This document shows positions 1 through 21,021 of a DNA stretch of 64,000 nt, one piece after another (positions within the stretch are counted from its first letter, which is position 1; the number at the start of each line of letters is the position of its first letter). The DNA comes from Diadema antillarum. Lineage: Eukaryota. Below the pieces are notes generated by a model. The model was not told the origin of the DNA. It made no database searches and saw only the letters and a list, made by a program, of their open reading frames with translations. Location of the stretch: contig NW_027271069.1 of the NCBI RefSeq assembly GCF_040938485.1, forward strand, positions 3,968,001 through 4,032,000, written 5' to 3'. A program made the position numbers and the translations under genes.

Positions 1-37
1 TTGGTTTTTGTTTAGCTGTATAAACCCGTTGTGCACA

Positions 38-51
38 CAACTAGAGGGCGC
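38..51 (+). promoter_or_regulatory. CTCF-like motif
   Basis: CAACTAGAGGGCGC, one mismatch to the common CCACTAGAGGGCGC core, flanked by GTGCAC on both sides. Motif match only. Confidence 0.2.
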
Positions 52-1312: not shown

Positions 1313-1561
1313 TACAAGAAGTACAGATTTTCAAAACATGAAGTTAGAGCGATTGCTGACATGCTTAACGATGGTGACCTTGACAGGAAAATGTGAAGGA
1401 GCAAAGCTCTTAGCAAAGGGCTGCAGATTTGCATAGCATTGAATTACTTTGCGAAGGGGTCAATCTTCGATGACATTGCAACCAACCACAATGTCGACTG
1501 CTCTACTGTATCCAGATACGTACACTGTGTGGCTCAAGCACTGTGTAACATCAAGAAACAT
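1313..1561 (+). pseudogene. PIF/Harbinger transposase N-terminal HTH fragment (HARBI1-like)
   Basis: Translates YKKYRFSKHEVRAIADML...M*RSKALSKGLQICIALNYFAKGSIFDDIATNHNVDCSTVSRYVHCVAQALC, matching the Harbinger YRF...R..A(L/I)S...Q...AL.(F/Y)...G.......S+SR.V..V..AL pattern. One in-frame stop; ends at a GTGAGT donor (1562). Confidence 0.75.
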
Positions 1562-1789
1562 GTGAGTATGTAAATAATCTACAATATATTCTAAATAATA
1601 ATAGAACTAGACATCTATATCGATATCTTGCAAAGACAGTAGATTGCACATGGTGGAATATGTGCACAAATAAACTAGCACTAGCAGCCATCTACTGTTA
1701 GGGACAGTATAAACGAGCTTCAAGTCCAAGCTCAGAATGATCACTGGAAGCAGAGTAATTAGCTGAATTAGGCATAGACATAAACATAA

Positions 1790-2570
1790 CCCAATGTAAC
1801 CCGATCCAGGTCGCGAGAGAAATCAACAAGATCGCCGATAAGGTTGAGGAAGTCAAACGCAAGGCAAAGCACTTCGTTATCAAAGGCAAGAATCCGAAAC
1901 AAGTTAAAGCACTCCTAGGTATCACCAGTTTCTGCAATTGTGCAGGGAAGACCGCAAACTCAAACAGCGACCATCCACCAACAATAGGAGTCATCAAACA
2001 AATTCCAACAAACTTAACAGAAAAAGATTTAGAGTCAGAGCTTTCATCCAAGGAGTCACTGAAGCAAAACGTATCAACAAACGCGAACAAGGAGTTCTAA
2101 AACCCACCACTGTAGTAACTTAACTTTTGCCTAAAGCAACCTGACCCCAACTGTAAGCATTGGTTTTGAAATTTTCCCTGTTACAACATACATACCGCCT
2201 GTCACCAGATGCTTTAAATGTCAAAGATTTGGCCACGGCCAAGAAACATGTCGTTTCAAGATTAGATGTGTGCGATGTGGCGACAGTGACATACACGTGT
2301 ATTAGACTCATGCCCCAATAAAGAAAGCCCGAAATGTCTGAAATGTGGAGGTCCTCATAGTGCAGCGTATGCCGGATGCCCACACAACAAGAATGCCCGC
2401 CGAATTCAAAACCACAAGATCATAAACAAACTGTCATATGCAGAAGCCGCAAAACAAATTCAAGAGAAACAGAAACAACAACAAGCCCCGGCTCCCATCA
2501 ATCCCCAACAGCAACTTCAACCCCAACCATTCATCCCCACTAATCATCAACCAACTCCACCCCTACCTCA
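1790..2570 (+). mobile_element. Non-LTR retrotransposon (I/Jockey group) gag-like ORF1 remnant
   Basis: YIPPVTRCFKCQRFGHGQETCRFKIRCVRCG...CPNKESPKCLKCGGPHSAAYAGCP gives three CCHC knuckles, followed by LSYAEAAK. Frameshifted, with stops. Confidence 0.8.
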
Positions 2571-3438
2571 TCTAACATTCCAGGTCATAACCATGGAAGA
2601 TCTCCTCGAGGTAATGGAGGACTTGCGCGTATTCGACGCAGAAGATCCAGCAGGGGGGGAGGGAGCCGCAGGACTCAGTCACTGAAAAAGGGGAATTCAT
2701 GGAAGCAGAACAACACGAATTTGGTGCACTTCAAAACCTAGAGGACATCAAGGACATGTCTTTGTCCCCATATTTAAGGAAGCTGCGCTGAAGCTGAAGT
2801 CTGATGACTTTCACAACGGGGCAGAAATGGGCAGCCAAGTTATCCAACCAGTGGATGACATCAACCTGTCATCCAAGGCAGCCATGGAGTCGGTCAAGAG
2901 CATTGAAGAGGATATCATTGAGATCATCAGTGCCGCAGGAGACAGAACTGTTGGTCCAGTGGCCAACACATACATCCTGACAAGGTTCGAGAGGTACAGG
3001 GATGGGGAATGAGCAGCCCACCTGTTCAAGGAACTGACGCTCAATCAGCAAACCCTCCCTTGCTGCTTCCTCCAGCAGTACCTTCTGCGCGCCATGCTGG
3101 AGAAAGTCATGAAGCGTTTACGTGGAGAAGAGGCCATACCAGAGCAAGGCATGGATCCACTTTCGGTTCATGACGAGCAAGTAACACTACATCCTGTATG
3201 CCTTGTGCAAGAGGTATGGCAAACTGAAATCAGAGAGTGCACGCTCAGTGGCAGCATTTCTGAAGAAGTGGAGAAAGGCAGATGATGACCACACAGAATG
3301 TGACACATTCCTTCAATACACATCAGTTTGGCTAACTTTCCAAAGCAGAGGGGGACTGTTCATCGTTTCTGATGATGTCTACAAACTTTTCAGGTCATTC
3401 GAAATGGAAACAAGGAGGGTGCTCACACTTGGAAATGG

Positions 3439-4006
3439 CAAACCAATATTGCTTGTGTATCTGATATAGCCAGTACCAGTTCTGCTATGACTCAGCCTCC
3501 AGTGCATTTGAAAACAAACTAAGTGTCCACATAAGATTAGTGCAGCTTGACTCTCTTGATATTCCAGGGCCAACATCTTTTCAACCACCACATTACAAAA
3601 CATCAATAAGGTCACAGCTTTCACTTGAACATTTCTCATTCTCTGAGCAGGATTCTCAGCAGGAGAAAGAAATGTATGATAAAGCCATTGTATATACTTT
3701 GGAGAGATATTTTTATGTGGTGCAGAATAAATCTTCTAACCTTCCTAGTTTAAGTGTAAATTGGCATTTGAGGGTGAACAAAATATAGAACATTCAGAGT
3801 TTTCAAACAGGTATGTACTAAATGACGTCTACGTCTTAGATCATTTTAAGAGGGGTTTGTTTGTGTCAAGTCTCACTGGAAAGGAATTTTCTCAGGTTGC
3901 AATGGATGAGGCTCATGAGATGCTGATAAATAAAGATTGCAAGACTGCATTTTCACAGCATTTACCTCAACATGTAGAAATAACTAGAATTATCACTGAA
4001 GGTGAT
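3439..4006 (+). mobile_element. Academ-like transposase fragment, short allele (also at 8519-9087)
   Basis: Same block as 5687-6853, but the ~603 bp at 6078-6680 is replaced by CGTCTACG. Confidence 0.6.
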
Positions 4007-4460
4007 TAATACCCCCGCCCCGAGTGTTGCTTCATAGTATGTGATGTCATGAGGGCAATGACGTCAATACCAAGTACACCAAATTTGACCTTCATAGCTT
4101 AAATGGTTTATTTTGATACAAAAATGAGTGGTTACCATGGCAACACATTTTCGTTATACTAACACATTGATGTCTTGCAAAACTACACTTCTAGATCATG
4201 ATACATACTAAATTTGACTTTAATTGCTAGAATGATAGAAAAGTTATTCGATCTGCAAGGTTTTGGTAAAATTGTGGTTACCATGGCAACGGTTTGTGTG
4301 ACAAACACAAAAATTATGTGTTCCACATCTATACCTCAGGGCCATACTGCCTACCAAATTTGGTTTCAATTGCTTGAAAACTGAAACTAAACACCAACTC
4401 TCATCAGTAATGATAGAAAATGAAGTTGATACTTAACATTTGAAGTAGAGGAATACAAAT
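4007..4460. repeat. Non-coding interspersed-repeat block within the array unit, carrying X-box and CRE palindromes
   Basis: TGACGTCA at 4059-4066; GTTACCATGGCAAC at 4131-4144 and 4277-4290. The block recurs at about 6854-7310 and 9088-9545. Confidence 0.6.
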
Positions 4461-4951
4461 TATGTCCTAGTGATTTTCGAGGGATTGCTCCATTACATTA
4501 ACTCGGTACATCCGATGTGTACAGGGTTTTCACCATTTAACAAAAAGGTAGGCAAATTAAAATGGACAAGAGAACATGTTGGACACTGCCTTTGCACTAC
4601 CTCACATGTACACTATTTCAGTAAAGTTGTTGATAAATATGTTATGCTATATATTAAAGTCATCTGTTGGTACCTTTTTACTTTAAACAATTTCTTTTTC
4701 TCATAATGCTCATGTTTACTTATATCTGCACCTCCAATACCAAGTATTTGTAGGTATGAGGCCATTTTAAGTTTGTTAGCTTAAAAATAGTAAAGTTAAA
4801 TACAGAACACATCTTATTAGTTGACTTATTTATAGCATATGTACTGTACTCTTGAATTATCAGTTTATTATGCTAACTACAGCATTTAAGTATAGAGATA
4901 TTGCATTACAAGTAGCCGTCATTCTTTTTTTTTTTAAATCTTTTCTTTAAA

Positions 4952-5686
4952 GAATTTGGTGCACTTCAAAACCCAGAGGACATCAAGACATGTCCTTGTC
5001 CCCATATTTAAGGAAGCTGCGCTGAAGCTGAAGTCTGATGACTTTCACAACGGGGCAGAAATGGACAGCCAAGTTATCCAACTAGCGGATGGCATCGATT
5101 TGTCATCCAAGGCAGCCATGGAGTCGGTCAAGAGCATTGTGGAGGATATCATTGAGATCATCAGTGCTGCAGGAGAGAGAACTGTTGGTCCAGTGGCCAA
5201 CACATACATCCTGACAAGGTTCGAGAGGTACAGGGATGGGGAATGAGCAGCCCACCTGTTCAAGGAACTGACGCTCAATCCGCAAACCCTCCCTTGCCGC
5301 TTTCTGCAGCAGTACCTTCTGCGCACCATGCTGGAGAAAGTCATGAAGCGTTTACGTGGAGAAGAGGGCATACCCCCTGCACAAGGCATGGATCCCCTTT
5401 TGGTTCACGATGAGCAAGTATTATGTTATGTTGCCGGCTACATCCCATATGCCTTGTGCAAGAGGTATGGCAAACTGAAATCAGAGAGTGCACACTCAGT
5501 GGCAGCATTTCTGAAGAAGTGGAGAAAGGCAGATGATGACCACACAGAATGTGACACATTCCTTCAGTACAAGTCAGTTTGGCTAACTTTCCAAAACAGA
5601 GGGGGACTGTTCATCGTTTCTGATGTCTACAAACTTTTCAGGTCCTTCGAAATGGAAACAAGGAGGGTGCTCACTCTTGGAAATGG
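4952..5686 (+). pseudogene. P-element/THAP9 C-terminal-like ORF, array copy 2 (other copies at 2593-3438 and 7798-8518)
   Basis: VLCYVAGYIPYALCKRY...WLTFQNRGGLFIVSD-VYKLFRSFEMETRRVL resembles the Y+AGY+ ... RGGL ... F...E..FR motifs of the P-transposase C-terminus. Premature TGA at 5244-5246. No DDE core seen. Confidence 0.55.
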
Positions 5687-6853
5687 CAAACCAATATTGC
5701 TTGTGTATCTGATGTAGCCAGTACCAGTTCTGCTATGACTCAGCCTCCAGTGCATTTGAAAAACAAACTAAGTGTCCGCATAACATTAGTGCAGCTTGAC
5801 TCTCTCGATATTCCAGGGCCATCATCTTTTCAACCACCACATTACAAAACATCAATAAGGTCACAGCTTTCACTTGAACATTTCTCATTCTCTGAGCAGG
5901 ATTCTCAGCAGGAGAAAGAAATGTATGATAAAGCCATTGTTTATATACTTTGGAGAGATATTTTTATGTGGTGCAGAATAAATCTTCTAACCTTCCTAGT
6001 TTTAAGTGTAAATTGGCATTTGGGGGTGAACAAAATATAGAACATTCAGAGTTTTCAAACAGGTATGTACTAAATGAGAAGGCAGACTCACCAGATACTT
6101 AAATTTACTGGGATGCTGGCTTGAAGGATGTGGCCAAGTTAACCCACAAGCAATCCACACTAAAAAGCTTAGGCAGCTGTACAAATTTCAAACGAATGCA
6201 CAGATTTCTGTTACAAATATATGAGGCAATTCTTATGTTGCAAGTTTCTAGTTTCTTATCATATAAGAGTGATCATGAGGTTCGTTTCACCAAAGAGGTC
6301 TTCTTGGGCATTGTGAAAGATGTTTTAGCTCATGCAGATATCAAAGATGGTAAATACAAGTGTATGTAGATTGCCATAAGTTTTTGGCATCACAGCAGGT
6401 TTTTATCACACAATCTATCCAAACACCAATGCATAATGAGTTCAGTTTATTTTGTAATGAAATGTCTGAGAAATTTGAAACTTTCGGTTTTGAAACCAAG
6501 TTTTAGTAAAAGATTGCCTATGTCGGGTCAATCTTTGGTTAGCAATACGTACAGGGAATTGGAAGTTAAGGTTATCGGCTCTGAAATCAATGGTACCACT
6601 GTTCACTGCCTTTGATAGGCAAAATTATGCATATTTGATTCCGTTTTGTTTCCATCAGTTACGTTCTTTACCCCGATACATCTTAGATCATTTTAAGAGG
6701 GGTGTGTTTGTGTCAAGTCTCACTGGAAAGGAATTTTCTCAGATTGCAATGGATGAGGCTCATGAGATGCTGATAAATAAAGATTGCAAGACTGCATTTT
6801 CACAGCATTTACCTCAACATGTAGAAAAAACTAGAATTATCACTGGAGGTGAT
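5687..6853 (+). mobile_element. Academ-like DNA transposase fragment (long allele)
   Basis: YVLNEKADS.DT / IYWDAGLKDVAK...SLGSCTNFKRMHRFLLQIYEA / LWLAIRTGNWKLRLSALKSMVPLFTAFDRQNYA...F..GVFVSSLTGKEFSQIAMDEAHEMLINKDCK. These motifs are recalled from AcademX-type transposases; the superfamily name is not verified. Confidence 0.6.
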
Positions 6854-9800
6854 TAATACCCCCAGCCCCGAGTGTTGCTTTATAGTATGTGATGTCATGA
6901 GGGCAATGACGTCAATACCAAGTACACCAAATTTGACCTTCATAGCTTAAATGGTTTATTTTGATACAAAAATGAGTGGTTACCATGGCAACACATTTTC
7001 GTTATACTAACACATTGGTGTCTTGCAAAACTACACTTCTAGATCATGATACATACTAAATTTGACTTTAATTGCTAGAATGATAGAAAAGTTATTCGAT
7101 CTGCAAGGTTTTGGTAAAATTGTGGTTACCATGGCAATGGTTTGTGTAACAAACACAAAAATTATGTGTTCCACATCTATACCTCAGGGCCATAATGCCT
7201 CCCAAATTTGGTTTCAATTGCTTGAAAACTGAAACTAAACACCAACTCTCATCAGTAATAATAGAAAATAAAGTTGATACTTAACATTTGAAGTAGAGGA
7301 ATACAACTTATGTCCTAGTGATTTTCGAGGGATTGCTCCATTACATTAACTCGGTACATCCGATGTGTACAGGGTTTTACACCAGCTAACAACAAGGTGG
7401 GCAAATTAAAATGGACAAGAAGACATGTAGGACACTGCCTTTGCACTACCTCACATGTACACTATTTCAGTAAAGTTGTTGATAAATATGTTTTGCTATA
7501 TCACAGTCATCTGTTGGTACCTTTTACTTTACACAATTTCTTTTTCTCATAATGCTCATGTTTCCTTATATCGGCACCTCCAATACCAAGTATTTGTAGG
7601 TATGAGGCCATTTTAAGTTTGTTAGCTTAAAAATAGTAAAGTTAAATACAGAACACATCTTATTAGTTGACTTATTTATAGCATATGTACTGTACTCTTG
7701 AATTATCAGTTTATTATGCTAACTACAGCATTTAAGTATAGAGATATTGCATTACAGGTAGCAGTCATTCTTTTTTTTTTTTGATCTTTTATTTAAAGAA
7801 TTTGGTGCACTTCAAAACCCAGAGGACATCAAGACATGTCCTTGTCCCCATATTTAAGGAAGCTGCGCTGAAGCTGAAGTCTGATGACTTTTGCAACGGG
7901 GCAGAAATGGGCAGCCAAGTTATCCAACTAGCGGATGGCATCGATTTGTCATCCAAGGCAGCCATGGAGTCGGTCAAGAGCATTGTGGAGGATATCATTG
8001 AGATCATCAGTGCCGCAGGAGAGAGAACTGTTGGCCCAGTGGCCAACACATACATCCTGACAAGGTTCGAGAGGTACAGGGATGGGGAACGAGCAGCCCA
8101 CCTGTTCAAGGAACTGACGCCCAATCAGCAAACCCTCCCTTGCTGCTTCCTCCAGCAGTACCTTCTGCGCGCCATGCTGGAGAAAGTCATGAAGCATCTA
8201 CGTGGAGAAGAGGCCATACCAGAGCAAGGCATGGATCCACTTTTGGTTCACGACGAGCAAGTAACACTACATCCTGTATGCCTTGTGCAAGAGGTATGGC
8301 AAACTGAAATCAGAGAGTGCACGCTCAGTGGCAGCATTTCTGAAGAAGTGGAGAAAGGCAGATGATGACCACACAGAATGTGACACATTCCTTCAATACA
8401 CATCAGTTTGGCTAACTTTCCAAAGCAGAGGGGGACTGTTCATCGTTTCTGATGATGTCTACAAACTTTTCAGGTCATTCGAAATAGAAACAAGGAGGGT
8501 GCTCACACTTGGAAATGGCAAACCAATATTGCTTGTGTATCTGATATAGCCAGTACCAGTTCTGCTATGACTCAGCCTCCAGTGCATTTGAAAAACAAAC
8601 CAAGTGTCCGCAGAAGATTAGTGCAGCTTGACTCTCTCGATATTCCAGGGCCATCATCTTTTCAACCACCACATTACAAAACATCAATAAGGTCACAGCT
8701 TTCACTTGAACATTTCTCATTCTCTGAGCAGGATTCTCAGCAGGAGAAAGAAATGTATGATAAAGCCATTGTATATACTTTGGAGAGATATTTTTATGTG
8801 GTGCAGAATAAATCTTCTAACCTTCCTAGTTTAAGTGTAAATTGGCATTTGAGGGTGAACAAAATATAGAACATTCAGAGTTTTCAAACAGGTATGTACT
8901 AAATGACGTCTACGTCTTAGATCATTTTAAGAGGGGTGTGTTTGTGTCAAGTCTCACTGGAAAGGAATTTTCTCAGGTTGCAATGGATGAGGCTCATGAG
9001 ATGCTGATAAATAAAGATTGCAAGACTGCATTTTCACAGCATTTACCTCAACATGTAGAAAAAACTAGAATTATCACTGAAGGTGATTAATACCCCCGCC
9101 CCGAGTGTTGCTTCATAGTATGTGATGTCATGAGGGCAATGACGTCAATACCAAGTACACCAAATTTGACCTTCATAGCTTAAATGGTTTATTTTGATAC
9201 AAAAATGAGTGGTTACCATGGCAACACATTTTCGTTATACTAACACATTGGTGTCTTGCAAAACTACACTTCTAGATCATGATACATACTAAATTTGACT
9301 TTAATTGCTAGAATGATAGAAAAGTCATTCGATCTGCAAGGTTTTGGTAAAATGGTGGTTACCGTGGCAACGGTTTGTGTGACAAACACAAAAATTATGT
9401 GTTCCACATCTATACCTCAGGGCCATAATGCCTACCAAATTTGGTTTCAATTGCTTGAAAACTGAAACTAAACACTTAACTCTCATCAGTAATGATAGAA
9501 AATGAAGTTGATACTTTACATTTGAAGTAGAGAAATACAAATTATGTCCTAGTGATTTTCGAGGGATTGCTCCGTTACATTAACTCGGTACATCCGATGT
9601 GTACAGGGTTTTTTCACCAGCTAACAAAAAGGTGGGCAAATTAAAATGGACAAGAAGACATGTAGGACACTGCCTTTGCACTACCTCACATGTACACTAT
9701 TTCAGTGAAGTTGTTGATAAATATGTTATGCTATATCAAAGTCATCTCTTGGTACCTTCTTACTTTAAACAATTTCTTTTTCTCATAGATAATGCTCATG

Positions 9801-10037
9801 TTTATTCATATCTGCACCTCCAATACCAAGTATTTGTAGGTATGAGGCCATTTTAAGTTTGTTAGCTTAAAAATAGTAAAGTTAAATACAGAACACATCT
9901 TATTAGTTGACTTATTTATAGCATATGTACTGTACTCTTGAATTATCAGTTTATTATGCTAACTACAGCATTTAAGTATAGAGATATTGCATTACAGGTA
10001 GCAGTCATTCTTTTTTTTTTTTGATCTTTTATTTGAA

Positions 10038-11008
10038 GAATTTGGTGCACTTCAAAACCCAGAGGACATCAAGACATGTCCTTGTCCCCATATTTAAGGA
10101 AGCTGCGCTGAAGCTGAAGTCTGATGACTTTTGCAACGGGGCAGAAATGGGCAGCCAAGTTATCCAACTAGCGGATGGCATCGATTTGTCATCCAAGGCA
10201 GCCATGGAGTCGGTCAAGAGCATTGTGGAGGATATCATTGAGATCATCAGTGCCGCAGGAGAGAGAACTGTTGGTCCAGTGGCCAACACATACATCCTGA
10301 CAAGGTTCGAGACGTACAGGGATGGGGAACGAGTAGCCCACCTGTTCAAGGAACTGACGCTCAATCAGCAAACCCTCCCTTGCCGCTTCCTCCAGCAGTA
10401 CCTTCTGTGCGCCATGCTGGAGAAAGTCATGAAGAGAAGAGGCCATACCAGAGCAAGACATGGATCCACTTTCGGTTCATGACGAGCAAGTAACACTACA
10501 TCCTGTATGCCTTGTGCAAGAGGTATGGCAAACTGAAATCAGAGAGTGCACAAGCAGTAGCAGCATTTCTGAAGAAGTGGAGAAAGGCAGATGATGACCA
10601 CACAGAATGTGATACATTCCTTCAGTACAAGTCAGTTTGGCTAACTTTCCAAAACAGAGGGGGGCTGTTCATCGTTTCTGATGATGTTTACAAACTTTTC
10701 AGGTCCTTCGAAATAGAAACAAGGAGGGTGCTCACACTTGGAAATGGTGAAGCTGAGGGATTGAAGAACGCATGATCAAGCAGATTTCAGACAACATTCT
10801 GGTGCAGAATATGTGGAGCAATGTTGCGGGCAGTCTGGAGCCACATTTGGCCAAGCCTCTCCTCTCAGTAATCATCAATTACTGGGTGAAAATACGAATT
10901 TCTTCGTATGTCAAGTGCTACCTGTCATCACTCAGGAGAGAGGCAAGAATCTCTGTGGGAAGGAAGAAGAGCTTGAGAAAAGAACTGAAAAAACAATATG
11001 AAAAGTAG
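10038..11008 (+). pseudogene. P-element/THAP9 C-terminal-like ORF, terminal copy retaining the native C-terminus
   Basis: After GGAAATGG (10747) this copy continues IKQISDNILVQNMW...IINYWVKIRISSYVK...RKKSLRKELKKQYEK*, whereas copies 1-3 jump to the Academ-like block. Frameshifted. Confidence 0.55.
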
Positions 11009-12677
11009 ACATGAGCATGAATATATGATGTTGTATACATCTCATGCCAGGAATGAGCAGGGAGGTGAGCTGAAACCCCTGGAATGACTAACACAGAGTT
11101 ATGGGCATTTACCACTGATACATGTAATACATTCGCCAATCAGCTTTGCTTTATTTTTGATAATGCCATTGTTGTCAATTCACTTTAGCATCACAATGGC
11201 TGGAGAGTCAGTAAACTGGATCATCCTTTATTGAGTAAATCCCCTAAGGTAGCGCAAACTCACAAAGCAAAGGAACTTTGCACTTCAAGCGCACTGGAGT
11301 ACTTCCTCTTTCCGAACTTCCTAAACGCTTTGGGGACACTTTCCTAACCAAAATGCTAACTTTCCTAACCAAATGCAAACTTTCCGAAACTTTCCGAAAG
11401 CGATTGGGCCAGCATGCCGTGTGAATAAAAGTGGTCATGTGATGGTGCAAAACTTTGTGCATGCAAGTAAATGTTGCTCTGCGCTTCGCCGAACGAGAAG
11501 AAAAGGACGATAACATTTTTAGAGAAGCTCCAATCTCTGCCTAGAACCCCAAGATAAGGTAGGCAAAGATCAAAGAACAATGAAGCTGATTTCCATTATT
11601 ATCACTGCTGTTAACAGGAGTAAGTAACGGAAGTATTTTTATATAAACCCTATTAATTAACGTTCGTCATGCCATTTCATCGCAAGATTCAACCGAAAGT
11701 GCTTAGGGTGCCCCCAGACACAGTAGAGTCTACACCGTCGCCGGCCATGTAGGCAGCGATACAGTATTTAGTTTACAGTCGCCCCCGCTTAAGGCTTAGC
11801 GGGAGCGGGAGGGGTTGGGAACCAAGCCTTCCAACTTAAAGTTAAAGCCTTTAAAATAGGTTGGTATTCTGTAACTTACGGAAGTTATGACAGAAGTTTG
11901 TTATAACTTTTAAATTGGTATTCTGTAACTCAATCATAAGTCACTGATTTAAGAAAAAAGTTACGATCGAGATGGGATTATGATAAAAGTTATGACAAGG
12001 GAGGAGTTTCATTTGTGAACAATCTTGTACAGGTCACATTCTCCCTGTGTATAAGAAGATATTCTTACCCAAACAATTTCAGAGAATTATCAAGGAGGCT
12101 AACCAGGAATGGATTGCTACTGTTCTGTATGATGACGAAGGCCATCTTTGAAACACCTACAAGCAGAGCTGGTACCAGCCACCTCCATCCCCAAAGTTGT
12201 CACATTACCAGGTTACTAGTGTTTGCTACATCACACCTGTATACAATTATTTTACACTTGTTTTGAAATGTAGTGGTATTACACTTTGTGTTGGGCAGTG
12301 GTCTATCTTTATTTATTTTTTTATATGTTGTAAATTGATCTTCAAAGTTCACTGAAATGTTAGTTTCAGTATTGATGTCCTTAGAATTTGAGTTTTCTGG
12401 AAGCATATAGTAAATAATGTTATATTATGCTTAGTGCATTTATGTTACTATTAATTGTTGCTTTCTATCAGGACATGGAGGTCATAATCCAACTTGGCAG
12501 GGTGAATGCAAGTTGCTACATCAACACAGCCTGATGGGCTAGAGAGCATGAACCTGGTGCATTTTAGTTCTGTAAGCGTTACTCCCTGGCCAGGCTTTTG
12601 TTACACGTACTTTACACTGCAACTGTACCCCTATTTTATCTTTCACTTCTCTGCCTATTTCCCTCTTCAACAAGGTA

Positions 12678-13142
12678 AGAGTCTTGTAAATTTAGACCAA
12701 TTACGCTCTAAGCTCTAATTGGGATGGACGGCCTGCACACCAAACAAGGCTAGTCCAAGAGCGCCCGCAGGAACTGTTTCCCAACCAAGTGGTAGCATTG
12801 GGACACCCAACAGAGTACCCCCCACGTTCTCCCGTTCTGACACCCCTAGACTTCTTTCTCTGGGGGTTTGTGAAGAGTCAAGTGTACTGACCACATTTCG
12901 CAGAGACCCTTTCAGTACTTTGGGACCACGTCAAAGCGGCCATGAGAGGTGTCTGCAGAGAACGTATCATCCACTCAGCTAGAGACGCGTCCAGACGCAC
13001 CAGACTCTGTATTCAGTTGGAAGGGGTGCAAGTGGAAGGAAGAGTTTAGAGATCTAGTTTTATCTCGGATAGTGTTTTGAACTGCTTTGAATTATAATTT
13101 GCATTTCTTTATCAATTTTGGTTATGATTCCTTTTATGCCTA
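12678..13142 (+). mobile_element. Tc1/mariner DD41D (rosa/Visitor-type) transposase 3' fragment, copy 1
   Basis: 12720-13049 translates WDGRPAHQTRLVQE...FPNQVVALGHPTEYPPRSPVLTPLDFFLWGFVKSQVY*...RTRLCIQLEGVQVEGRV*. There are 41 residues between the DG aspartate and the PLD aspartate. Confidence 0.85.
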
Positions 13143-13325
13143 GAGAAGCAAACGCACCAATTTCATCCGCTTGATCCCACCATCCAAGTGCTGTGTGCCC
13201 TTGGCTATCATGCTACAGACGAATTGCTGTCTGATAGGGAAGAGATTCATCACATAAACATACCAACAGTGTTGGGAACAGTATGGGCAGTGGCCCAGGC
13301 CCTGATACGGAAGAAAAAACGAGAA
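13140..13325 (+). pseudogene. Second PIF/Harbinger HTH fragment
   Basis: LEKQTHQFHPLDPTIQVLCALGYHATDELLS...INIPTVLGTVWAVAQALIRKK, matching the HARBI1-like P..QVL.ALG(F/Y) ... V..AL pattern. Confidence 0.65.
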
Positions 13326-13782
13326 AAGAGTATTGAAAATTTAGACCAATTGGGCTCTAAGCTCTAATTGGGATGGATGCCCTGCAAGCCTAGTCCAAGA
13401 GCACCTGCAGGAACTAATTCCCAACCAAGTAGTAGCATTGGGACACCCAACAGAGTACCCCCAACGTTCTCCCGTTCTGACACCCCTAGACTTCTTTCTC
13501 TGGGGGTTTGTGAAGAGTCAAGTGTACTGACCACCTTTCGCAGAGACCCTTTCAGTACTCTGGGAACATGTCAAAGCGGCCATGAGGGGTGTCGGCAGAG
13601 AACTTATCATCCGCTCAGTTAGAGACGCGTACAGACGCGCCAGCCTCTGTATTCAGTTGGAAGGGGCGCAAGTGGAAGGAAGAGTTGAGAGATCTAGTTT
13701 TATCTCGGATAGTGTTTTGAACTGTTTTAAATTTTAATTTGCATTTCTTTATAAATTTTGGTTATGATTCCTTTTATGCCTA
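13326..13782 (+). mobile_element. DD41D mariner 3' fragment, copy 2 (direct repeat of copy 1)
   Basis: Near-identical to 12678-13142, with a small deletion after GATGGATGCCCTGCA. Confidence 0.85.
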
Positions 13783-13839
13783 TGAAAATCATGTCAAAGC
13801 ATAAAGTGCACTATTAATAAATATCAACATCATTGTAGT

Positions 13840-14240
13840 AACATGACCTTAAATGGTCAGCTCAAGTTGACAAAATGTTTAAACAGGCAAACATGAGACT
13901 CCACACGCTCAGGATTCTGAAGGGCTTTAACCTGCCTACAGTGCATTTAGTTAACGTTTACACAGCATATGTCAGGCCAGTCCTAGAATACTGCGCCATT
14001 GTTTGGAACTCAGGTTTGACAAAGAAACAAAGTGAAGAAATGGAGAAGATACAAAAACATGTATGTCGTCTCATGCTCGGCCCCTCATTTGTAAATTACC
14101 CAATACATTACCTGTTTGTGATTTATCAAAGTTATGTCAACGCCATCTAAAATTGTGCCAGAAATTTAAGTTCAGTTGTATTACCCATGATTATGATTTG
14201 CTCCCACCTACCAGAATGGAAACACATGTACGTAATTTAC
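13840..14240 (+). mobile_element. CR1/L2-group LINE ORF2 C-terminal fragment
   Basis: DLKWSAQVDKMFKQANMRLHTLRILK...VYTAYVRPVLEYCAIVWNSGLTKKQSEEMEKIQK, the typical post-RT region. Confidence 0.85.
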
Positions 14241-14247
14241 AGAGTAA

Positions 14248-15714
14248 CTAGAAATGTCGCTATGGCGACTGATGCCTCCGCCATAATGCATGATTCTCCC
14301 AATAGGCGTATAGTACCATGTCTTCACAATGTGTGATCCATGACAGTTTCACATAACTGGCAAAATATTGATATGACAGGTTTGTCAGAAATGACTTGAA
14401 TGTTCACTTTCCTTGAACTGGGTTTGCTATGATTGTCGAAGAGTGCAGGTACACATATTTGGGGAATTGAGAATTTTTACTTGAATTCTGACGGACCCTT
14501 TTATAAGTTTATGCATTGAGCAATTTCCAAGGTATGAAGAAAGAGTGTAATTACAGTACAAATAGATTTTTTTTTTTTTTTTTTTGGGGGGGGGCATAGA
14601 AACCTGGCCTTTGACCCTTAACCTTTGACCTTTGACATTCTGGCTGGAAATTTCCTGGAGAATCTCCATTAGGTAATGCATGTATATATCAAGTTTGAAA
14701 ACTAATGATGCAAGCATTTCATATATACTAGTGTATGAGGGAAATAGTAAAATATTGTGGAGTTGACCTTGACCTTTGACCCCATGACTATTGACCTATG
14801 ACCCCTAAATTCCCTAGATAATCTCTGCCAGTCAGTACATGCGTATGTACCAAGTTCCATGAAGATACATTGAACCATTTGTGAGAAAAGTGATATTACA
14901 TTTTCACCTAACCTTTGACCTTATGACATTAAACTCTCTCTGGAGAATCTTTACGCAGTAGTACATGTCTACACCAAGTTTCAAGAAAATACCTTAGGGC
15001 ATTGCATAGATATTGGGGAAATAGCAACATTTTTAGCATTTGACATTGACCTTTTGACCTTTGACCTCTTGCCAATGTCACTAAAATCTACTCAACTAAT
15101 TGTCCCATCATACATCATCCTTGGACCAAGTTTGGTGAAAGCTGCTTCATCCAGTTTTGAGTTATCACGTAAACAGATAAATTTCAGGATTTGACCTTGA
15201 TCTTTGACCTTTGACCTCAGTCCGATTTCACGAAGAAACTAATCAAGTAATTGTCCCATCATACATCATCCTACAACAAAGTCTGGTGAAATTTGATCGA
15301 TCCAGTCTTGAGTTATCGCGTAAAGGGATACAATTTCATGATTTGACCATGACCTTTGACCTCAGTCCGATTTCACTAAGAAACTAATCAAGTAATTGTC
15401 CCATCATACATCATCCTACAACAAAGTTTGGGGAAATTTGATCGATCCAGTCTTGAGTTATCGCGTAAAAGGATACAATTTCATGATTTGACCTTGACCT
15501 TTGACCTTTGACCTTTGGCGGATTTCACCCAAATCTAATCAACTAATTGCCCCATCATACTTTATACTTCGACCAAGTTTGGTAGAATTCAAGTCAATAT
15601 TACTCAAGTTATCGCGTAAACGAAAGCGGACGGACGTACAGACGTACGTACGGACGTACATACGGATGGACGGACGGACAACCCGAAAACATAATGCCAT
15701 AGTGGCGGAGGCAT
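14248..15714 (-). mobile_element. Non-autonomous Helentron-type element (HINE/DINE-1-like)
   Basis: Subterminal inverted repeats ATGCCTCCGC/GCGGAGGCAT, terminal hairpin GTCGC-TATG-GCGAC next to CTAG, (GGAC/GTAC)n microsatellite near the other end, TGACCTT-rich body, insertion in a T/A run. Confidence 0.75.
15030..15620. repeat. ~145-151 bp tandem repeat (about 4 copies) inside the HINE
   Basis: GTCCCATCATAC-like anchor at 15102, 15253, 15398 and 15549. Confidence 0.85.
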
Positions 15715-16750
15715 AAAAAATGTGTTCAGTGAGTTTAAGTGCAGAACAAGTCATATGTATGCTTTCGTTCCTGAGCATATCATTTGCATAAAGTTTCCCA
15801 AAATCTGTTCCGGAGCATCACCAGTTTCCATTTTTTTAAAACAAATTTTGCCATTCCAAAGACCACCATTTTCGAAATTCGCTCCAGAGAATCGCCATTT
15901 TACATATGTTGGTGAACCTTGCCGTTCCGATGACTGTACATGCAATTTAGAGCAGCATTTTCACTCTCAAATTGGGTCAAAATGGCTGCTTGTTTTGGAG
16001 TGCCTCATTATCACACTCAAAACGGCTCAAACTCGTTCCGGAGACCCTCATTTTCATGTTCAACCGCTCGGGTTTCCGTTTTGGAGGCCCTGCATTTCTT
16101 TTTCTTGCTGCAGCACATACCTACCAAAATTTGGGGTGAGGAGGGTGAGTACAATTTTACACGCATAATGCAAAATTTTTCATTGCAAATATCCATGAGT
16201 GGAAGAATCGATCATGACGGAAAACCAAGCGTAGCGATTACAGTACAATGGCCCGGAGACAGTTGTGGTCAACCGACTACACAGAGTATGAAAGCTTTCC
16301 TGAAAGGAGATCGTTGGAGGAGAGGAAACCACTTATGAAATATGAAAGAGCATTGAATTTTATGTGGAATTCAACGTTTTTTTGACAAAAATCCGTTTAG
16401 AAATGGCTGAGAAAAGCAAAAATAAGTTGTCCGATAAAAGTGTGGGACCAACACTTTCTTGCGTGAAACGACCATACAAACATGTACCTCCCTCTACTGT
16501 TTGAATTTGACTGCACTGGGCTTGAGGCTTTTTCAACCGTTATCTTCCGCACACGCAAGCAATGTGTGCCCCGCACGGCTTGGTCTGGGAGGTTGACCTT
16601 TTCACCTCAATCTGACCTCCGTGAATTTGGGAGAGAAAGTGTGGGAGTGTTGCGTAATCACGGGTGCGTCGTCGATCGTTCGGTTTGTTTACCCCATGAG
16701 CTTAGAGGGGAGTCTCCGATCTCCCTGCTGCTGTTTCCTTCCAAACAAAA

Positions 16751-16932
16751 ATGGACGCCGAAGAGATGAAACCGAAAAAGAGAAAGACGTACTTTGAATC
16801 TTATGATAGAAAGTGAGGAAACACTATGAAGAGGATACGAATAGGAGTAAAAACTCACGAGGAGTGGGCAAGATGCCGTAGCGACCTAGGATTCAAAAGG
16901 GACGACCAGCTCGCAGAGTTTTTGTTACAAAA
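16751..16932 (+). pseudogene. Possible first exon of a transposon-encoded protein (Kolobok-like N-terminal motif)
   Basis: MDAEEMKPKKRKTYFESYDRK*GNTMKRIRIGVKTHEEWARCRSDLGFKRDDQLAEFLLQK, then a GTGAGT donor. The R+.IG....W.....LG...D.+LA.FLL motif is recalled from Kolobok-associated proteins. Confidence 0.35.
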
Positions 16933-17473
16933 GTGAGTACTGCATACTATCAAAATAGTAGAGGAGAGGAAAGGAGTTGCCTCTTAATGTGCCTTCTGCC
17001 GACGAGATGTCAAAACTAGAAAGTGTTCTAGAAGAGTACAGACTGTCACTGCTCAATCACGACCCAGACCACATTTACTGTGGAGGAGACATCACTTCAG
17101 GTCTACCGAGGAGCACGTTAGTGAAGATCGGGACAGAAAGCATAGTAAAGCATCCATTTCACTCATTTGTGAAGCGTTATGCATTCCCGAACAAAGACAT
17201 AGCTGATAAAGTATGGCCAATACTATGCACTGTCCTTGAGAGACCGCCTTCAAAAACAGAAACAGTAACTGCATTGATAACATGTGGATGCATTCAGAGT
17301 AAACTTCTGAACTGGTTTGCATACTCTACATACATCAACGAGGTACATTCTGTGTATTAATGTGTGGATACCCCACGGAGTCGAGAGAGAGAGCGCTGTC
17401 ACTGCTGGCCAGAAATGAGATATCCAGACACCGGGGTAATAACAGTATGTATGCGCTTTGAGCACTCTATTAA

Positions 17474-17854
17474 AGGGATAGTATAGTATTGGTGGAGATG
17501 AGAATTGGGCTTTTAACTTTTTGTGAGATACCAAGAAAACACTTATGAAAAAGTATAGAGCATACCATTTAAAGAGGAATCCAAAGTTTATTTGATGAAA
17601 ATCAGGTTTGGAATGACTGAAGCATCCAAACACAAAGTAAAACAAAGCGATCATAATAAAATGTGGGTCCCAAACTTTATTGAATTGCTCTGTTTTGGAT
17701 ATCTCAGCCATTTCAAAACCAATTTTCATCAAATAAACGTTGAATTCCTCATGGAATTACATGCTCTTTCATATTTCATAAGAGATTTCTCATTATCTCA
17801 CCAAAAAATGTTAGAAACCTGAAATTAGATCTCAACCAAAACTGTACGATCCCT
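17474..17854. mobile_element. Kolobok-type MITE with TTAA TSD
   Basis: TTAA|AGGGATAGTATAG ... CTGTACGATCCCT|TTAA. The internal sequence is shared with 22207-22557, 25597-25875, about 37170-37500 and about 16330-16440. Confidence 0.8.
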
Positions 17855-18829
17855 TTAAGTGGATTTAGTGCGATATAAATTCATATCATTATTATTACAA
17901 TAATGTACACATAATGCCTAAACCTCTAATTCTAATACTGAAAATCAAGTAATCCATACCTGCTCAATCACCCAAAGTAAGAAAAAAAAAGCATAGATGG
18001 GATAATGTTGCGACCTGAATTTTCACTTTGTTGTAGCAGGAATTTTGTTATAACCTTGTTTGTTATAACAAGAGTTCACTGCATTCATAGAGAAACTTGT
18101 TGATATTTTGCTTTTTTGATTATCTTAAATCAGCTGTGTATTTATATCTGATGCATACAATAGGCACGTCCACTTACTGTTTACTATCATTGTTGAATGT
18201 CTGATATTCATTGTATACATCGGTTGGATCATGCTTATTGTAGTCAACAGATTTAACTCTAGTCAAGGGGAGGGCCTTTTTGACCCCCCTGCCATTTTCT
18301 TCATTGTGCATCTAGTCTGATTGGAATTTCTAAATCCAAATCCAAACATTCCCCCTGATTCATAAAAAATTTGTACATTCAGATTTTTAATGAATTACAT
18401 TTCAAGAAAAATGGTCTGATTTTTCATTCCCGACTTGTCTTATAATTGTGTCAATTTTCAAGTCAACCGTTCAATTCGTTGCCGAAATTTGAAAGGGGGG
18501 GGGGGGGGAGAGAAAAAGCCCCCAGAATTTATGCAACTTATTCTTGGGAATTGTTTTCTTCCTTGTGAGAGCATATATCAACTTGATGGCCACAGATGAA
18601 AATGCAGATGAGTATGCTGATGAGGATGCTCCATGTGCCATCCCTGAATACGTGCCAGCCCTCACCCATCTGTAAGTAGCAAGAATAGTGCTATTGCACA
18701 CAATGATAACATTATGCAGCATAACTAATTTTGTAAGATGGCGAACAATTCAGATGCATAGATCTGTATGCATATGAAATCAGTATAACCTATTCTCATA
18801 ACATTAATCACATTATTCACAAACCTGAC

Positions 18830-20147
18830 TTAGCCCTATTTTGCCTGGGCTATTTGGGAAGGTCCATCCCAAGATGGGATCACTCATTGCTAAGGAGCCA
18901 CTTGAGGTCCTGGTGATGGATTTCACTGTATTTGAGTCCAGCTCCAGTGGGTATGAGAATGTGTTAGTCCTCACAGATGTCTTCACGAAGTACACGCAAG
19001 CCATCCCAACGAAGGACCAGCGGGCCAGTACTGTTGCCAAAGTTCTTGTACAAAGCTGGTTTGTGCGGTTCGGAGTCCCAAAACGCTTACAAAGTGATCA
19101 GGGTAGGAATTTCGAGAGCACCATCGTGAAGGAGCTCTGCCAGCTGTATGGTGTGCATAAGACACGGACCACACCGTATCACCCTCAGAGTAACTCCCAG
19201 TGGGAGAGGTTTAACAGGACGGTGCATGATCGCCTTCGCACCCTTCCCCCAGAAAAGAAGAAGAAATGGCCAGAGTATCTGCCAGAGTTGGTGCATGCCT
19301 ACAATTGCACTCCACACTCTTCAACTGGATATCCCCCATACTATGCTTATTCTTCAGTAGGGACCCTGTACTGCCTGTGGATCACCAGCTTGGGCTGATG
19401 GATTCAACTTCCTCCAGTGAAGAGTGGAAGTCTCTCCATCATAGCCAATTGCGGACCGCATTTGACATAGCACAGCGGATGACAGAGAAGGAAGTTCTCA
19501 GACGTCAAGAGAGAGTTAACAGAGTGGCAAAGAACACAAGCCTTGTGATCGGAGCGAGGGTATTCACTTAGAACAGAGTTCTAGGGAGGAACAAGATACA
19601 AGATGTCTGGATTGATGTACCTTACAAGGTGGTGGCAAGACCCTTCCCTGAAGGAAACGTGTACGTGGTGGAGCCCCTTGATGGAAGTGGCAGTCAGAAA
19701 ACAGTACACCGTAGAGACTTGCTTGACACCCGAACCTTGGTGGAACATACATGTATCAATCCAGGCCAGGCTGATGTAGTCTCTTCACCTAGCACACCAG
19801 ATGTCAGCTCTGCCAATGAACAAGGTCAGCTTGAGGTCATTTTCCATGTCAATCCCACTAGCACTAACTCCATGGCACAGAACCCAACCATTACTTCCGA
19901 AAATGCAGGGGAGCAGACCCTGCAAGATGACGAGGCAACTGAGGGGCAGCGTAGTGATGGTGAAGATGCCCCTGCAAATGAATCTACCACACCCATGCAA
20001 GATAATGAGGATGCTGTTCCCCAGCTGAGAAGATCGAGGAGATTCCAAGGGAGACCTCCGTCACCCTCATCCCTCTCAAGTGAAATTGTCGCTGACATCA
20101 CAAGGTCTCATCTTCTGTTCATGCAGATGTTCGCAAATATCTCTTAA
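18830..20147 (+). mobile_element. Ty3/Gypsy pol 3' remnant (integrase core plus GPY/F region)
   Basis: PLEVLVMDF...VLTDVFTKY...[17 protein letters not shown]...[18 protein letters not shown]...[16 protein letters not shown], then a frameshift and KIQDVWIDVPYKVV. 5'-truncated. Confidence 0.95.
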
Positions 20148-20337
20148 TTTTCTTGTTGTTTATTTCTATCTTTCTAAATCTCTCTCTCCATCACTTTCTC
20201 TCTGATTTCTATCTATTCGCTGTTTCTCTTATTCTACCTCTCATTGACAGCTTTTGTTATATGCTTTTGATACTTGGAATTTACGCCTTGTTTATATGTT
20301 GGAGTGTCAGGACGACACTCATTTAAGCAGGGGAGGA

Positions 20338-20760
20338 TGTAACAGCTAGTAATGATCGGGGTACACTGTATATATTTCTCCTCCTTTATTACACACTGTA
20401 TAACACTATATTGTATACTACCACTTCATACCTCTACCATGTACTACCAAGTACATGTACTGTATATATATCCCTTTTTAGTGTACTACACAGAGTCTTG
20501 TGTGCACAATGTCTCACCCTTCCCTATTCATTGGAAGGCAGGGCAAGAAGTTTGTATGTGTGCACTTGATAATGAAACAAAAGGTGAGTCATGACTCAGA
20601 TGGTCAGCCTTGGCTTGGACCATGAGAAACATTCTCATTTTTAGCCTTGCTGCCATGAGGAGAAGTTGGTAGTGGACAAGCCTGCCGGTCAGTGACTTCT
20701 TTGTCACACAACTTGTCATACAACTTGGTAGGAGTCTGGCACATCTTGTTACTTGTTACA
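20338..20760 (+). mobile_element. Gypsy 3' LTR (423 bp) with upstream polypurine tract
   Basis: PPT AAGCAGGGGAGGA directly before TGTAACA; the LTR ends TGTTACA (7-bp terminal inverted repeat). Confidence 0.85.
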
Positions 20761-21021
20761 TGGTACAATGCTCACCTTCTAGGGGGTTTTGGTTTTTTTT
20801 TGGTTTTTGTTCGAGATTTGCTCTCGCAATAAAGATTTAATGCATAATAGCAATCAAAACAACTTGAGAGTTCCGTGCAGTTTGTCACATTACACAAGCA
20901 TTACATAATCTCTAATTGAACAGGAGTATATAATGTCAAGCAATAGGTGCGGTACCACTCCCCGCCCACCTGCGGTACTCTCTGCTGCTATGTGAAGACT
21001 ACCTGGAGCGCTAAACAGCTG

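What the first reader, a model, noticed from the sequence alone, without database searches (positions are those of the whole stretch)
1313..20760. Gene-free mosaic of transposon fragments all on one strand, antisense to IPPK read-through: candidate unistrand piRNA cluster
Seen: eight separate coding remnants (Harbinger-1, I-type ORF1, Academ/THAP9-like unit, DD41D mariner, Harbinger-2, CR1/L2, Kolobok-like exon, Gypsy) are all on +, mostly as short pieces without termini. If they were independent, the chance of this is 2x0.5^8, about 0.008; independence and my ascertainment are uncertain. The region ends abruptly ~260 bp past the IPPK stop, and IPPK runs on minus, so read-through or a minus-strand promoter would give RNA antisense to every fragment. 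Established: unistrand piRNA clusters such as Drosophila flamenco show this kind of orientation bias. The cluster role is inference.
Basis: partly seen in the sequence, partly recalled or inferred. Interest (0 to 1): 0.8.

Follow-up and report, generated by a model that had tools for sequence, protein, structure and literature searches.

The report
Co-oriented transposon graveyard downstream of IPPK
In a sea urchin (Diadema antillarum), the gene-free DNA behind the IPPK gene is full of broken transposons whose readable coding pieces all point the same way; a piRNA-producing locus would look like this, but so could chance plus tandem duplication, and no RNA data exist to decide.

Summary
The core observation holds. 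In window 1313-20760 no host gene was detected, and every transposon (TE) coding remnant I could support lies on +. IPPK is on minus, with its stop codon at 21022-21024.

The count of eight independent pieces does not hold:
- Six get some support: two Harbinger N-termini, a LINE ORF1 (by eye only), a DUF6589-type unit, a reverse-transcriptase tail and a Gypsy integrase.
- The "mariner" and "Kolobok" pieces could not be verified.
- 8 kb of the span is one tandem array, which is a single part-unit in the other haplotype.
- Non-coding repeats occur in both orientations.

The bias does extend. In the 27 kb to the left, and in segments found only in the other haplotype, pogo, THAP, integrase, gag-protease and Myb-like remnants are again all on +, with none on minus. 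That gives about 7-9 independent events (two-sided P 0.016-0.004).

The scan has flagged at least seven similar loci in this genome, so chance is not excluded. No RNA run holds the stretch, so piRNA production is untested.

My odds: ordinary graveyard 0.45, unistrand piRNA cluster 0.3, other minus-strand transcription effect 0.15.

The parts
1..1313 (+). Right end of a 6.35-kb insertion present only in this haplotype. It starts 5035 bp left of the window. It is an LTR-type retroelement remnant with 182-bp direct repeats (97% identical), the right one ending at the insertion's right end and the left one about 590 bp inside its left end, and an integrase H2C2 ORF on +.
   Evidence: Absent from the other haplotype, and the empty site is contiguous there. 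Integrase_H2C2 E 1.4e-13. At least 30 genomic copies at 85-92% aa identity.
1301..1570 (+). Harbinger/PIF-type transposase N-terminal HTH remnant ('Harbinger-1'), split by the insertion above. In the other haplotype a THAP ORF lies about 360 bp upstream of it.
   Evidence: HTH_Tnp_4 E 0.0055, weak. Translation read by eye. THAP E 2.8e-8 at L005:4305-4607.
2200..2682 (+).
   Evidence: Seen by eye only. No convincing Pfam family (only a sub-threshold THEG4 match) and no word-search hit.
2717..10747 (+). Tandem array A-B-A-B'-A-B-A. The A parts (about 0.72 kb) start at about 2717, 4952, 7798 and 10038. It derives from a large-transposase element, and it is a single A part in the other haplotype.
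   Evidence: 94-99% identity between copies. (the other haplotype aligns 1314-3445 and then 10036-11248).
6494..6853 (+). DUF6589-type ORF inside array part B'. Its relatives elsewhere in the genome sit in open frames of 1700-1800 aa.
   Evidence: PF20231 E 3.5e-5, below the curated cut-off. Genomic relatives at 49-64% aa identity.
11248..12211 (.). Stretch specific to this haplotype. The other haplotype has 2.8 kb here, carrying a Myb/SANT-like ORF in the + orientation of the window.
   Evidence: (Myb_DNA-bind_4 E 9.5e-13).
13128..13364 (+). Second Harbinger-type N-terminal remnant ('Harbinger-2'), lying between two 466-bp direct repeats (12677-13142 and 13326-13782).
   Evidence: Aligns with Harbinger-1, E 3e-8. 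Repeat reported.
13842..14147 (+). C-terminal tail of a non-LTR (CR1/L2-like) reverse transcriptase.
   Evidence: ALKBH8_N E 3.5e-5, above the cut-off. tblastn with an RT library from this genome matched 13848-14012 on +.
14248..15715 (.). Recently inserted non-autonomous DNA transposon with a TA target-site duplication and an internal 145-bp satellite. It is absent from the other haplotype.
   Evidence: empty site. (at least 40 copies at 89-96%). An inverted relative lies about 52 kb to the left.
16962..17357 (+). The family was not verified.
   Evidence: No Pfam family. No word-search hit. About 10 degenerate genomic copies at 36-48% aa, plus short partial matches at 59-80%. Atlas result below recognition level.
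17466..17858 (.). Palindromic MITE-like element of very high copy number, so it has no defined orientation.
   Evidence: Inverted repeats. Very high summed depth in DNA contigs.
18829..20144 (+). Gypsy-type integrase core and C-terminal remnant. It is old: the nearest intact genomic copies are only 73% identical in protein.
   Evidence: rve E 3.5e-17 and rve_3..
21025..21186 (-). Last coding exon of IPPK, with the stop codon at 21022-21024. Candidate poly(A) signals on minus lie at 20836 and 20385.
   Evidence: (matches IPPK residues 418-465 of 471, weak on its own at E 0.11).

Best explanation
This is an ordinary, fast-turning-over, repeat-dense spacer (a transposon graveyard). It runs from IPPK's 3' end leftwards past the window start, towards a cluster of GPCR genes. 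TE coding remnants are found over about 47 kb of it.

The remnants come from several superfamilies: Harbinger, LINE, a large DUF6589-type transposase, Gypsy and other LTR elements, pogo and THAP. All of them happen to lie on +. On this reading the co-orientation has no function. It reflects three things:
1. A modest number of truly independent insertions, about 7-9.
2. Local tandem duplication, which copies orientation. There are two multi-kb arrays, and direct repeat alignments outweigh inverted ones 14 to 1.
3. Selection of the locus by a reader who scanned hundreds of windows.

Shown here: the anatomy, the strand tally, the tandem arrays and the haplotype polymorphism.
Inferred: that nothing selects for orientation.
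For: - Tandem array at 2717-10747, reduced to one part in the other haplotype.
- A second array of about 3.5-kb units to the left, plus macrosatellites. Direct versus inverted self-alignments total 168 kb versus 12 kb.
- Non-coding repeats occur in both orientations.
- Most coding remnants are old and far from intact copies: Gypsy integrase 73% aa, DUF6589 ORF 64% aa. They would be poor guides against the intact copies found.
- There is no significant strand asymmetry of haplotype substitutions.
- Poly(A) hexamers are not depleted on minus: 53 on minus versus 45 on +.
- At least seven other loci were flagged the same way in 733 windows of this genome. That is the order of magnitude chance would give for runs of 7-9.
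Against: - In the 27 kb to the left, pogo, THAP, integrase H2C2 and gag are all on + and none on minus; a Mutator-like hit on + lies somewhere in the 60 kb scanned but was not placed.
- The same holds in segments specific to the other haplotype: Myb-like, aspartyl protease and a P2RX7_C-like ORF are all in the + orientation. For 4-6 new events the one-sided P is about 0.06-0.016.
- The bias spans DNA transposons, LINEs and LTR elements alike. That argues against any single insertion mechanism.
- The same ORF scan did find host genes on both strands in the flanks, so the method is not strand-biased.
Confidence: 0.45

Rival explanations
1. This is a unistrand (flamenco-type) piRNA source locus. 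A minus-strand precursor starts at or reads through from IPPK's 3' end near 20.4-21 kb. It runs leftwards for at least 47 kb and is antisense to every TE remnant. It is then processed into antisense piRNAs. Insertions in the + orientation are retained because they add useful guides.
For: - About 7-9 independent remnants from at least five superfamilies are all on +, none on minus.
- The zone is gene-free and starts 262 bp after a minus-strand gene's stop.
- It keeps acquiring insertions. A 6.35-kb LTR-type element was inserted on +, and a TA-duplication DNA transposon has also landed; both are present in only one haplotype. Both belong to families with many copies at about 90% identity.
- Read-through from an upstream gene is a documented way of making unistrand clusters in mosquitoes (bioRxiv 10.1101/2022.08.22.504762).
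- piRNA-like 28-nt RNAs that are clustered in the genome and match transposons are reported from a sea urchin gonad (reviewed in PMC13666137).
Against: - There are no small-RNA or long-RNA data of any kind.
- Most remnants are too diverged from the intact copies found to guide silencing.
- There are 53 canonical poly(A) hexamers on the supposed precursor strand.
- There is no significant transcription-type substitution asymmetry.
- Whether sea-urchin clusters show TE orientation bias at all is unknown.
Confidence: 0.3
2. The spacer lies inside, or is swept by, a minus-strand transcription unit that has nothing to do with piRNAs. This could be a long alternative IPPK 3' UTR, a read-through transcript or an unannotated lncRNA. 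Insertions in the sense orientation were removed by selection because they bring splice and termination signals. This is the classical antisense bias of TEs within genes.
For: - The co-orientation is antisense to the neighbouring gene.
- All neighbouring genes to the left (three 7tm_1 receptor genes) and IPPK itself are on minus.
- Transitions between the haplotypes lean in the direction expected for a minus sense strand: 279 C/T versus 235 A/G on +, P 0.058.
Against: - No exon-like host domain was found in the zone.
- Minus-strand poly(A) hexamers are not depleted here, whereas the IPPK gene body shows that trend.
- From general knowledge, the antisense bias within genes is mainly seen for LINE and LTR elements. 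Here DNA-transposon remnants are co-oriented too.
- No RNA contig covers the stretch.
Confidence: 0.15
3. The pieces are not independent at all. They are fragments of only two or three large elements broken up by nested insertions, or a composite block that moved or duplicated as a unit. For example, one LTR element could account for gag and protease on the left and the integrase at 18.8 kb. One LINE could account for the ORF1 at 2.2 kb and the RT tail at 13.8 kb.
For: - The order on + of gag, then protease, then integrase, and of ORF1 then RT tail, is colinear with intact elements.
- The THAP ORF and the Harbinger-1 HTH are contiguous once the 6.35-kb insertion is removed.
Against: - No RT or RNase H lies between the supposed halves.
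- The two Harbinger pieces are the same domain, so they are two elements.
- The block is not found as a unit elsewhere in the genome apart from the allele, though only 39 of about 17,000 candidate matches were scored.
- pogo, the DUF6589 unit and the integrase-bearing insertion are unrelated families.
Confidence: 0.05

Closest known systems
Drosophila flamenco (unistrand piRNA cluster)
   Same: A gene-poor mosaic of truncated TEs from many families. Nearly all share one orientation, and the mosaic begins next to a protein-coding gene.
   Different: flamenco is defined by small RNAs, a mapped promoter and genetics. Here none of these is available. Most fragments here are old and diverged rather than copies of recently active elements. 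A large share of the span is tandem array and satellite.
Mosquito core piRNA clusters made by read-through from upstream genes (bioRxiv 10.1101/2022.08.22.504762) and the flamenco-like Aedes cluster (PMC7161354)
   Same: The proposed geometry is the same. A unidirectional cluster lies directly downstream of a gene on the same strand as the precursor, and the trapped elements are antisense.
   Different: The mosquito clusters were shown by small-RNA-seq, RNA-seq and chromatin profiling, and they are enriched for viral fragments. Here only the geometry is shown.
Antisense orientation bias of TEs inside transcription units
   Same: Recognisable TE remnants are antisense to the neighbouring gene's direction of transcription.
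   Different: No transcription unit is known to cover the spacer. DNA transposons share the bias. Poly(A) hexamers are not depleted on the putative sense strand.
Ordinary TE nests or graveyards with tandemly amplified TE-derived units (macrosatellites)
   Same: Nested, truncated elements, multi-kb tandem arrays with copy-number differences between haplotypes, and many insertion/deletion differences between alleles.
   Different: A run of 7-9 co-oriented independent remnants with none opposed is uncommon for a random nest (P 0.016-0.004).

Membership tests
Unistrand (flamenco-type) piRNA cluster | Dense 24-32-nt, 1U-biased, PIWI-bound small RNAs mapping almost only to one strand | not testable with these tools
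   No RNA run holds the stretch. No small-RNA data for this species appear in the genome papers.
Unistrand (flamenco-type) piRNA cluster | One long precursor transcript from a promoter at one end | not testable with these tools
   Only DNA-like contigs could be laid on 15301-21300. The sequence proxies tried (substitution asymmetry, poly(A) hexamers) gave no significant signal.
Unistrand (flamenco-type) piRNA cluster | Fragments of many TE families, mostly in one orientation | tested here: met
   All Pfam-supported TE remnants are on + in the window zone, in the 27 kb to the left and in segments specific to the other haplotype. None is on minus. Non-coding repeats are mixed.
Unistrand (flamenco-type) piRNA cluster | Fragments similar enough to potentially active elements to guide their silencing | tested here: inconclusive
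   Gypsy integrase is 73% aa and the DUF6589 ORF 64% aa identical to the nearest intact copies. The 6.35-kb insertion is about 90% aa and the satellite-bearing transposon 89-96% nt identical to their families.
Read-through-driven piRNA cluster (mosquito type) | Lies directly downstream of a gene transcribed in the direction of the precursor | tested here: met
   IPPK is on minus with its stop at 21022-21024, and the TE zone begins within about 300-900 bp.
Read-through-driven piRNA cluster (mosquito type) | Transcripts continuous from the gene into the cluster | not testable with these tools
   No RNA run was available.
TE antisense bias within a transcription unit | The region lies within a transcribed gene or lncRNA on the opposite strand | tested here: inconclusive
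   No host exons were detected in the zone. Minus-strand poly(A) hexamers are not depleted. Transcription itself was not testable.
Tandem array of a TE-derived unit (2717-10747) | Head-to-tail copies of one unit at high identity, with copy number varying between alleles | tested here: met
   Four A parts and three B parts at 94-99% identity. The other haplotype has a single A part.

The most novel reading that the evidence does not exclude
This would be the first structurally defined piRNA cluster of an echinoderm. It would be a unistrand locus of at least 47 kb, fed by read-through from IPPK as in mosquitoes. It would be one of a class of gene-downstream, strand-coherent transposon traps that recur across the Diadema genome; the scan has flagged at least seven more.
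Probability: 0.28. Interest if true: 0.6.

Novelty: new member of a known kind. Interest (0 to 1): 0.35.

Why it matters
The papers I could search say only that piRNA-like RNAs of one sea-urchin gonad are clustered in the genome. No echinoderm cluster has been mapped or described.

If strand-coherent TE spacers downstream of genes turn out to be piRNA sources, that would show flamenco-like or read-through cluster architecture in a deuterostome invertebrate. It would also give a sequence-only way to nominate clusters in newly sequenced genomes.

If they are not piRNA sources, this locus is a useful warning. A run of 7-9 co-oriented TE remnants, partly produced by tandem duplication, turns up by chance in a genome-wide scan and should not be read as a cluster without small-RNA data.

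Tried and rejected
1. RNA evidence. The look-up of sequencing runs (kind rna) listed no RNA holder. The two runs laid (X1, X2) are short contigs at 95-99% identity, with huge summed depth on repeats and even depth elsewhere. They look like genomic DNA, so they say nothing about expression.

2. A p53-family gene upstream on minus would have made the zone partly intronic. I rejected this. The P53 hits belong to a repeat present at 55 or more places in the genome.

3. Local TE protein library. RT loci from this genome gave only the one RT tail at 13848-14012 on +, plus a 17-aa match at 40069-40119 that is probably spurious, and nothing on minus in 124 kb. Libraries for Harbinger and mariner could not be built. 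My E-value cut for Transposase_1 was too strict. I did not try to get around this, so there is also no haplotype control over the IPPK gene body.

4. Word search for the 'Kolobok-like' ORF and the ORF1 found nothing. The Atlas result was below recognition level.

5. Strand asymmetry of haplotype differences. A first pass gave A/C versus G/T of 77:44 (P 0.0035). That was an artefact of array copies aligned to the same allele more than once. With unique alignments it is 79:62 (P 0.18), and A/G versus C/T is 235:279 (P 0.058).

6. Poly(A)-hexamer depletion on minus: none.

7. Orientation of dispersed repeat pairs. This was dominated by arrays and was not informative.

8. The Mutator-like + hit could not be placed on a particular ORF.

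9. ORFs shorter than 55-75 aa were not scanned, so very short or heavily broken minus-strand remnants could have been missed.

Full report
WHERE THE WINDOW IS

The window is C181:3,968,001-4,032,000 of a 1.75-Gb, 2963-contig assembly. That matches the uncollapsed Diadema antillarum assembly described in bioRxiv 10.64898/2026.05.24.727502 and PMC13511894. Both papers report 84.4% duplicated BUSCOs. The second shows that both haplotypes were retained: the haploid size is about 0.7-0.9 Gb and heterozygosity is 2.52%.

Accordingly, contig C1118 carries a 95-96% identical, inverted copy of the locus. I treat it as the other haplotype.

CHECKING THE OBSERVATION

I translated all stop-to-stop ORFs of at least 55 aa from both strands of window 1-21 kb. 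There were 83 on + and 66 on minus. I scanned them against Pfam under identical conditions.

On + the TE-type hits are:
- DUF6589 at 6494-6853.
- The C-terminal tail typical of non-LTR reverse transcriptases (ALKBH8_N) at 13842-14147.
- The integrase core (rve, rve_3) at 18829-19395.
- A weak HTH_Tnp_4 at 1397-1570.

On minus there is only DNA_pol_B_2 at E 0.0057. For 66 queries that is noise level.

Further checks on individual pieces:
- The RT tail was found independently with an RT protein library cut from this genome. That library matched nothing else credible on either strand of 124 kb; its one other hit was a 17-aa match at 40069-40119.
- 'Harbinger-2' (13128-13364) has no Pfam hit but aligns with the Harbinger-1 HTH. 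Because both are the same part of the protein, they are two elements, not halves of one.
- The 'I-type ORF1' shows CCHC zinc knuckles by eye only.
- I could not find the 'DD41D mariner'.
- The 'Kolobok-like exon' is a low-copy, degenerate repeated ORF of unknown family.

IPPK is on minus. The PF06090 exon is at 28762-28968. An exon at 22604-22822 matches IPPK residues 357-416. The last exon, 21025-21186, matches residues 418-465 of the 471-aa chain 5mw8_A, weakly on its own (E 0.11), and its stop is at 21022-21024.

WHY THE PIECES ARE NOT EIGHT INDEPENDENT EVENTS

- 2717-10747 is one tandem array, A-B-A-B'-A-B-A, at 94-99% identity. The other haplotype has a single A part. These 8 kb, 41% of the finding, count as one event.
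- The satellite-bearing element at 14248-15715 is a recent insertion with a TA target-site duplication. It is absent from the other haplotype and has at least 40 genomic copies. Its relative about 52 kb to the left is inverted.
- The element at 17466-17858 is palindromic.

So the strand rule holds for protein-coding remnants but not for non-coding repeats.

I fetched 100 kb to the left of the window and repeated the two-strand scan.

In the 60 kb next to the window, the + strand carries:
- A pogo element (HTH_psq assigned by eye, plus DDE_1 at E 7.9e-19) at L005:1755-3678.
- A THAP ORF.
- An integrase H2C2 ORF.
- A gag ORF.
- A Mutator-like hit that I could not place on a particular ORF.

The minus strand carries no TE domain.

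The P53 hits on minus are not a p53 gene. They belong to a repeat unit found at 55 or more places in the genome.

This insertion is absent from the other haplotype. It has 182-bp direct repeats (the right one at its right end, the left one about 590 bp inside its left end), and the short duplicated flank typical of an insertion. It belongs to a family with at least 30 copies at about 90% aa identity.

Segments present only in the other haplotype carry, in the window's + orientation, a Myb/SANT-like ORF (E 9.5e-13), an aspartyl protease next to the gag, and a weak P2RX7_C-like ORF. They carry nothing in the opposite orientation.

Further out, from 100 to 60 kb left and across window 21-64 kb, the same scan finds only host genes, and it finds them on both strands: 7tm_1, DUF1647 and IPPK on minus; an alpha/beta hydrolase and a SET domain on +. 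So the method is not strand-biased. The TE coding remnants are confined to about 47 kb, from roughly 27 kb left of the window to 20.1 kb.

HOW SURPRISING IS IT

Counting conservatively, the events are:
- THAP with Harbinger-1
- LINE
- the DUF6589 array
- Harbinger-2 with the Myb-like ORF
- Gypsy integrase
- the integrase-bearing insertion
- pogo
- gag with protease
- possibly Mutator

That is 7-9 independent events, all on +. The two-sided P is 0.016-0.004.

The part that was not used to raise the flag supplies 4-6 events. That works as a one-sided replication at about 0.06-0.016.

Against this, the same reader raised at least seven similar flags in 733 windows of this genome. One was followed up with the verdict that sequence alone cannot decide. 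A few runs of this length are what chance would give in a scan of that size.

Local duplication is also overwhelmingly tandem here. Direct self-alignments total 168 kb against 12 kb inverted, and tandem duplication propagates orientation.

TESTS OF THE piRNA READING

- No public RNA run holds the stretch. The two runs that do are DNA-like contigs. The genome paper lists only 12 RNA-seq runs and never mentions small RNA or piRNA.
- Substitutions between the haplotypes show no significant complementary asymmetry once array copies are counted once: A/G versus C/T 235:279, P 0.058; A/C versus G/T 79:62, P 0.18. An earlier 'significant' value came from double counting.
- The putative precursor strand carries 53 canonical poly(A) hexamers against 45 on +. 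The IPPK gene body shows the expected trend towards depletion, 20 versus 32.
- Most remnants are far from the intact copies found: Gypsy integrase 73% aa, DUF6589 ORF 64% aa. The two haplotype-specific insertions belong to younger families.

None of this refutes a cluster, and none supports it beyond the geometry.

COMPARISON WITH WHAT IS KNOWN

The geometry matches Drosophila flamenco. Because the zone starts just behind a gene on the precursor strand, it also matches the read-through-driven core clusters of mosquitoes (PMC7161354).

In sea urchins, the papers I could search report only piRNA-like 28-nt RNAs that are 'clustered in the genome' in one species' testis (PMC13666137). No cluster has been described.

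Membership in either family cannot be claimed, because the defining features (small RNAs, a precursor transcript) are untestable here. Only co-orientation and position are met.

VERDICT

My odds are:
- 0.45: ordinary TE graveyard, co-oriented through chance plus tandem duplication.
- 0.30: unistrand piRNA source.
- 0.15: some other minus-strand transcription effect.
- 0.05: a few elements broken into many pieces.

The locus is a reasonable candidate for a small-RNA experiment, together with the other flagged loci. It is not yet a finding.

Noticed in passing
L009:4378-4731 and L009:6390-6848, minus strand (45.6 and 43.6 kb left of the window start); genome-wide: A repeat unit carries the C-terminal half of a p53-family DNA-binding domain plus a tetramerisation motif. 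It occurs at 55 or more places in the genome, nearly always as two copies about 2.1 kb apart and mostly with open frames. A multi-exon p53 gene proper seems to lie on C306 and C1500. This is either a host exon captured by a mobile or tandem unit, or an expanded gene family.
   Followed up: partly
window 2717-10747 versus L003/L007 (C1118): The 8-kb array A-B-A-B'-A-B-A is a single A part in the other haplotype, like a solo-LTR state. This suggests either A-by-A recombination or reintegration of an amplified circle. Relatives of its DUF6589-type ORF elsewhere sit in open frames of 1700-1800 aa.
   Followed up: partly
L006:8630 to L001:7430 (about 21.4 to 12.6 kb left of the window): A second tandem array with a unit of about 3.5 kb and about 2.5 copies at 92-96% identity. 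Its ORFs are on +, and it has fewer copies in the other haplotype.
   Followed up: no
L041 to L010 (about 65 to 49 kb left of the window): A macrosatellite of about 15 kb with sub-repeats of roughly 0.5 to 2.5 kb at 80-99% identity.
   Followed up: no
L044:3496-4542, L043:2094-3093 and L042:6667-7677, all minus strand: Three tandem rhodopsin-type receptor (7tm_1) genes, apparently intronless. They are the nearest host genes found to the left of the spacer.
   Followed up: no
window 14248-15715: A non-autonomous DNA transposon with a TA target-site duplication and an internal 145-bp satellite array. It is polymorphic between the haplotypes and has at least 40 genomic copies at 89-96% identity.
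   Followed up: partly
window 21568-21642, minus strand: A tRNA-Ala(AGC)-like sequence, about 550 bp upstream of the IPPK stop codon and so inside the gene's last intron. It scored 53 bits in Rfam and was also found by ARAGORN. Another first-stage note already covers it.
   Followed up: no
L007:9047-9496, minus strand of the locus (a segment specific to the other haplotype): An ORF with a weak P2X7 C-terminal (ballast-like) match, E 4e-4. Another note in this scan links that domain to Kolobok-type elements.
   Followed up: no
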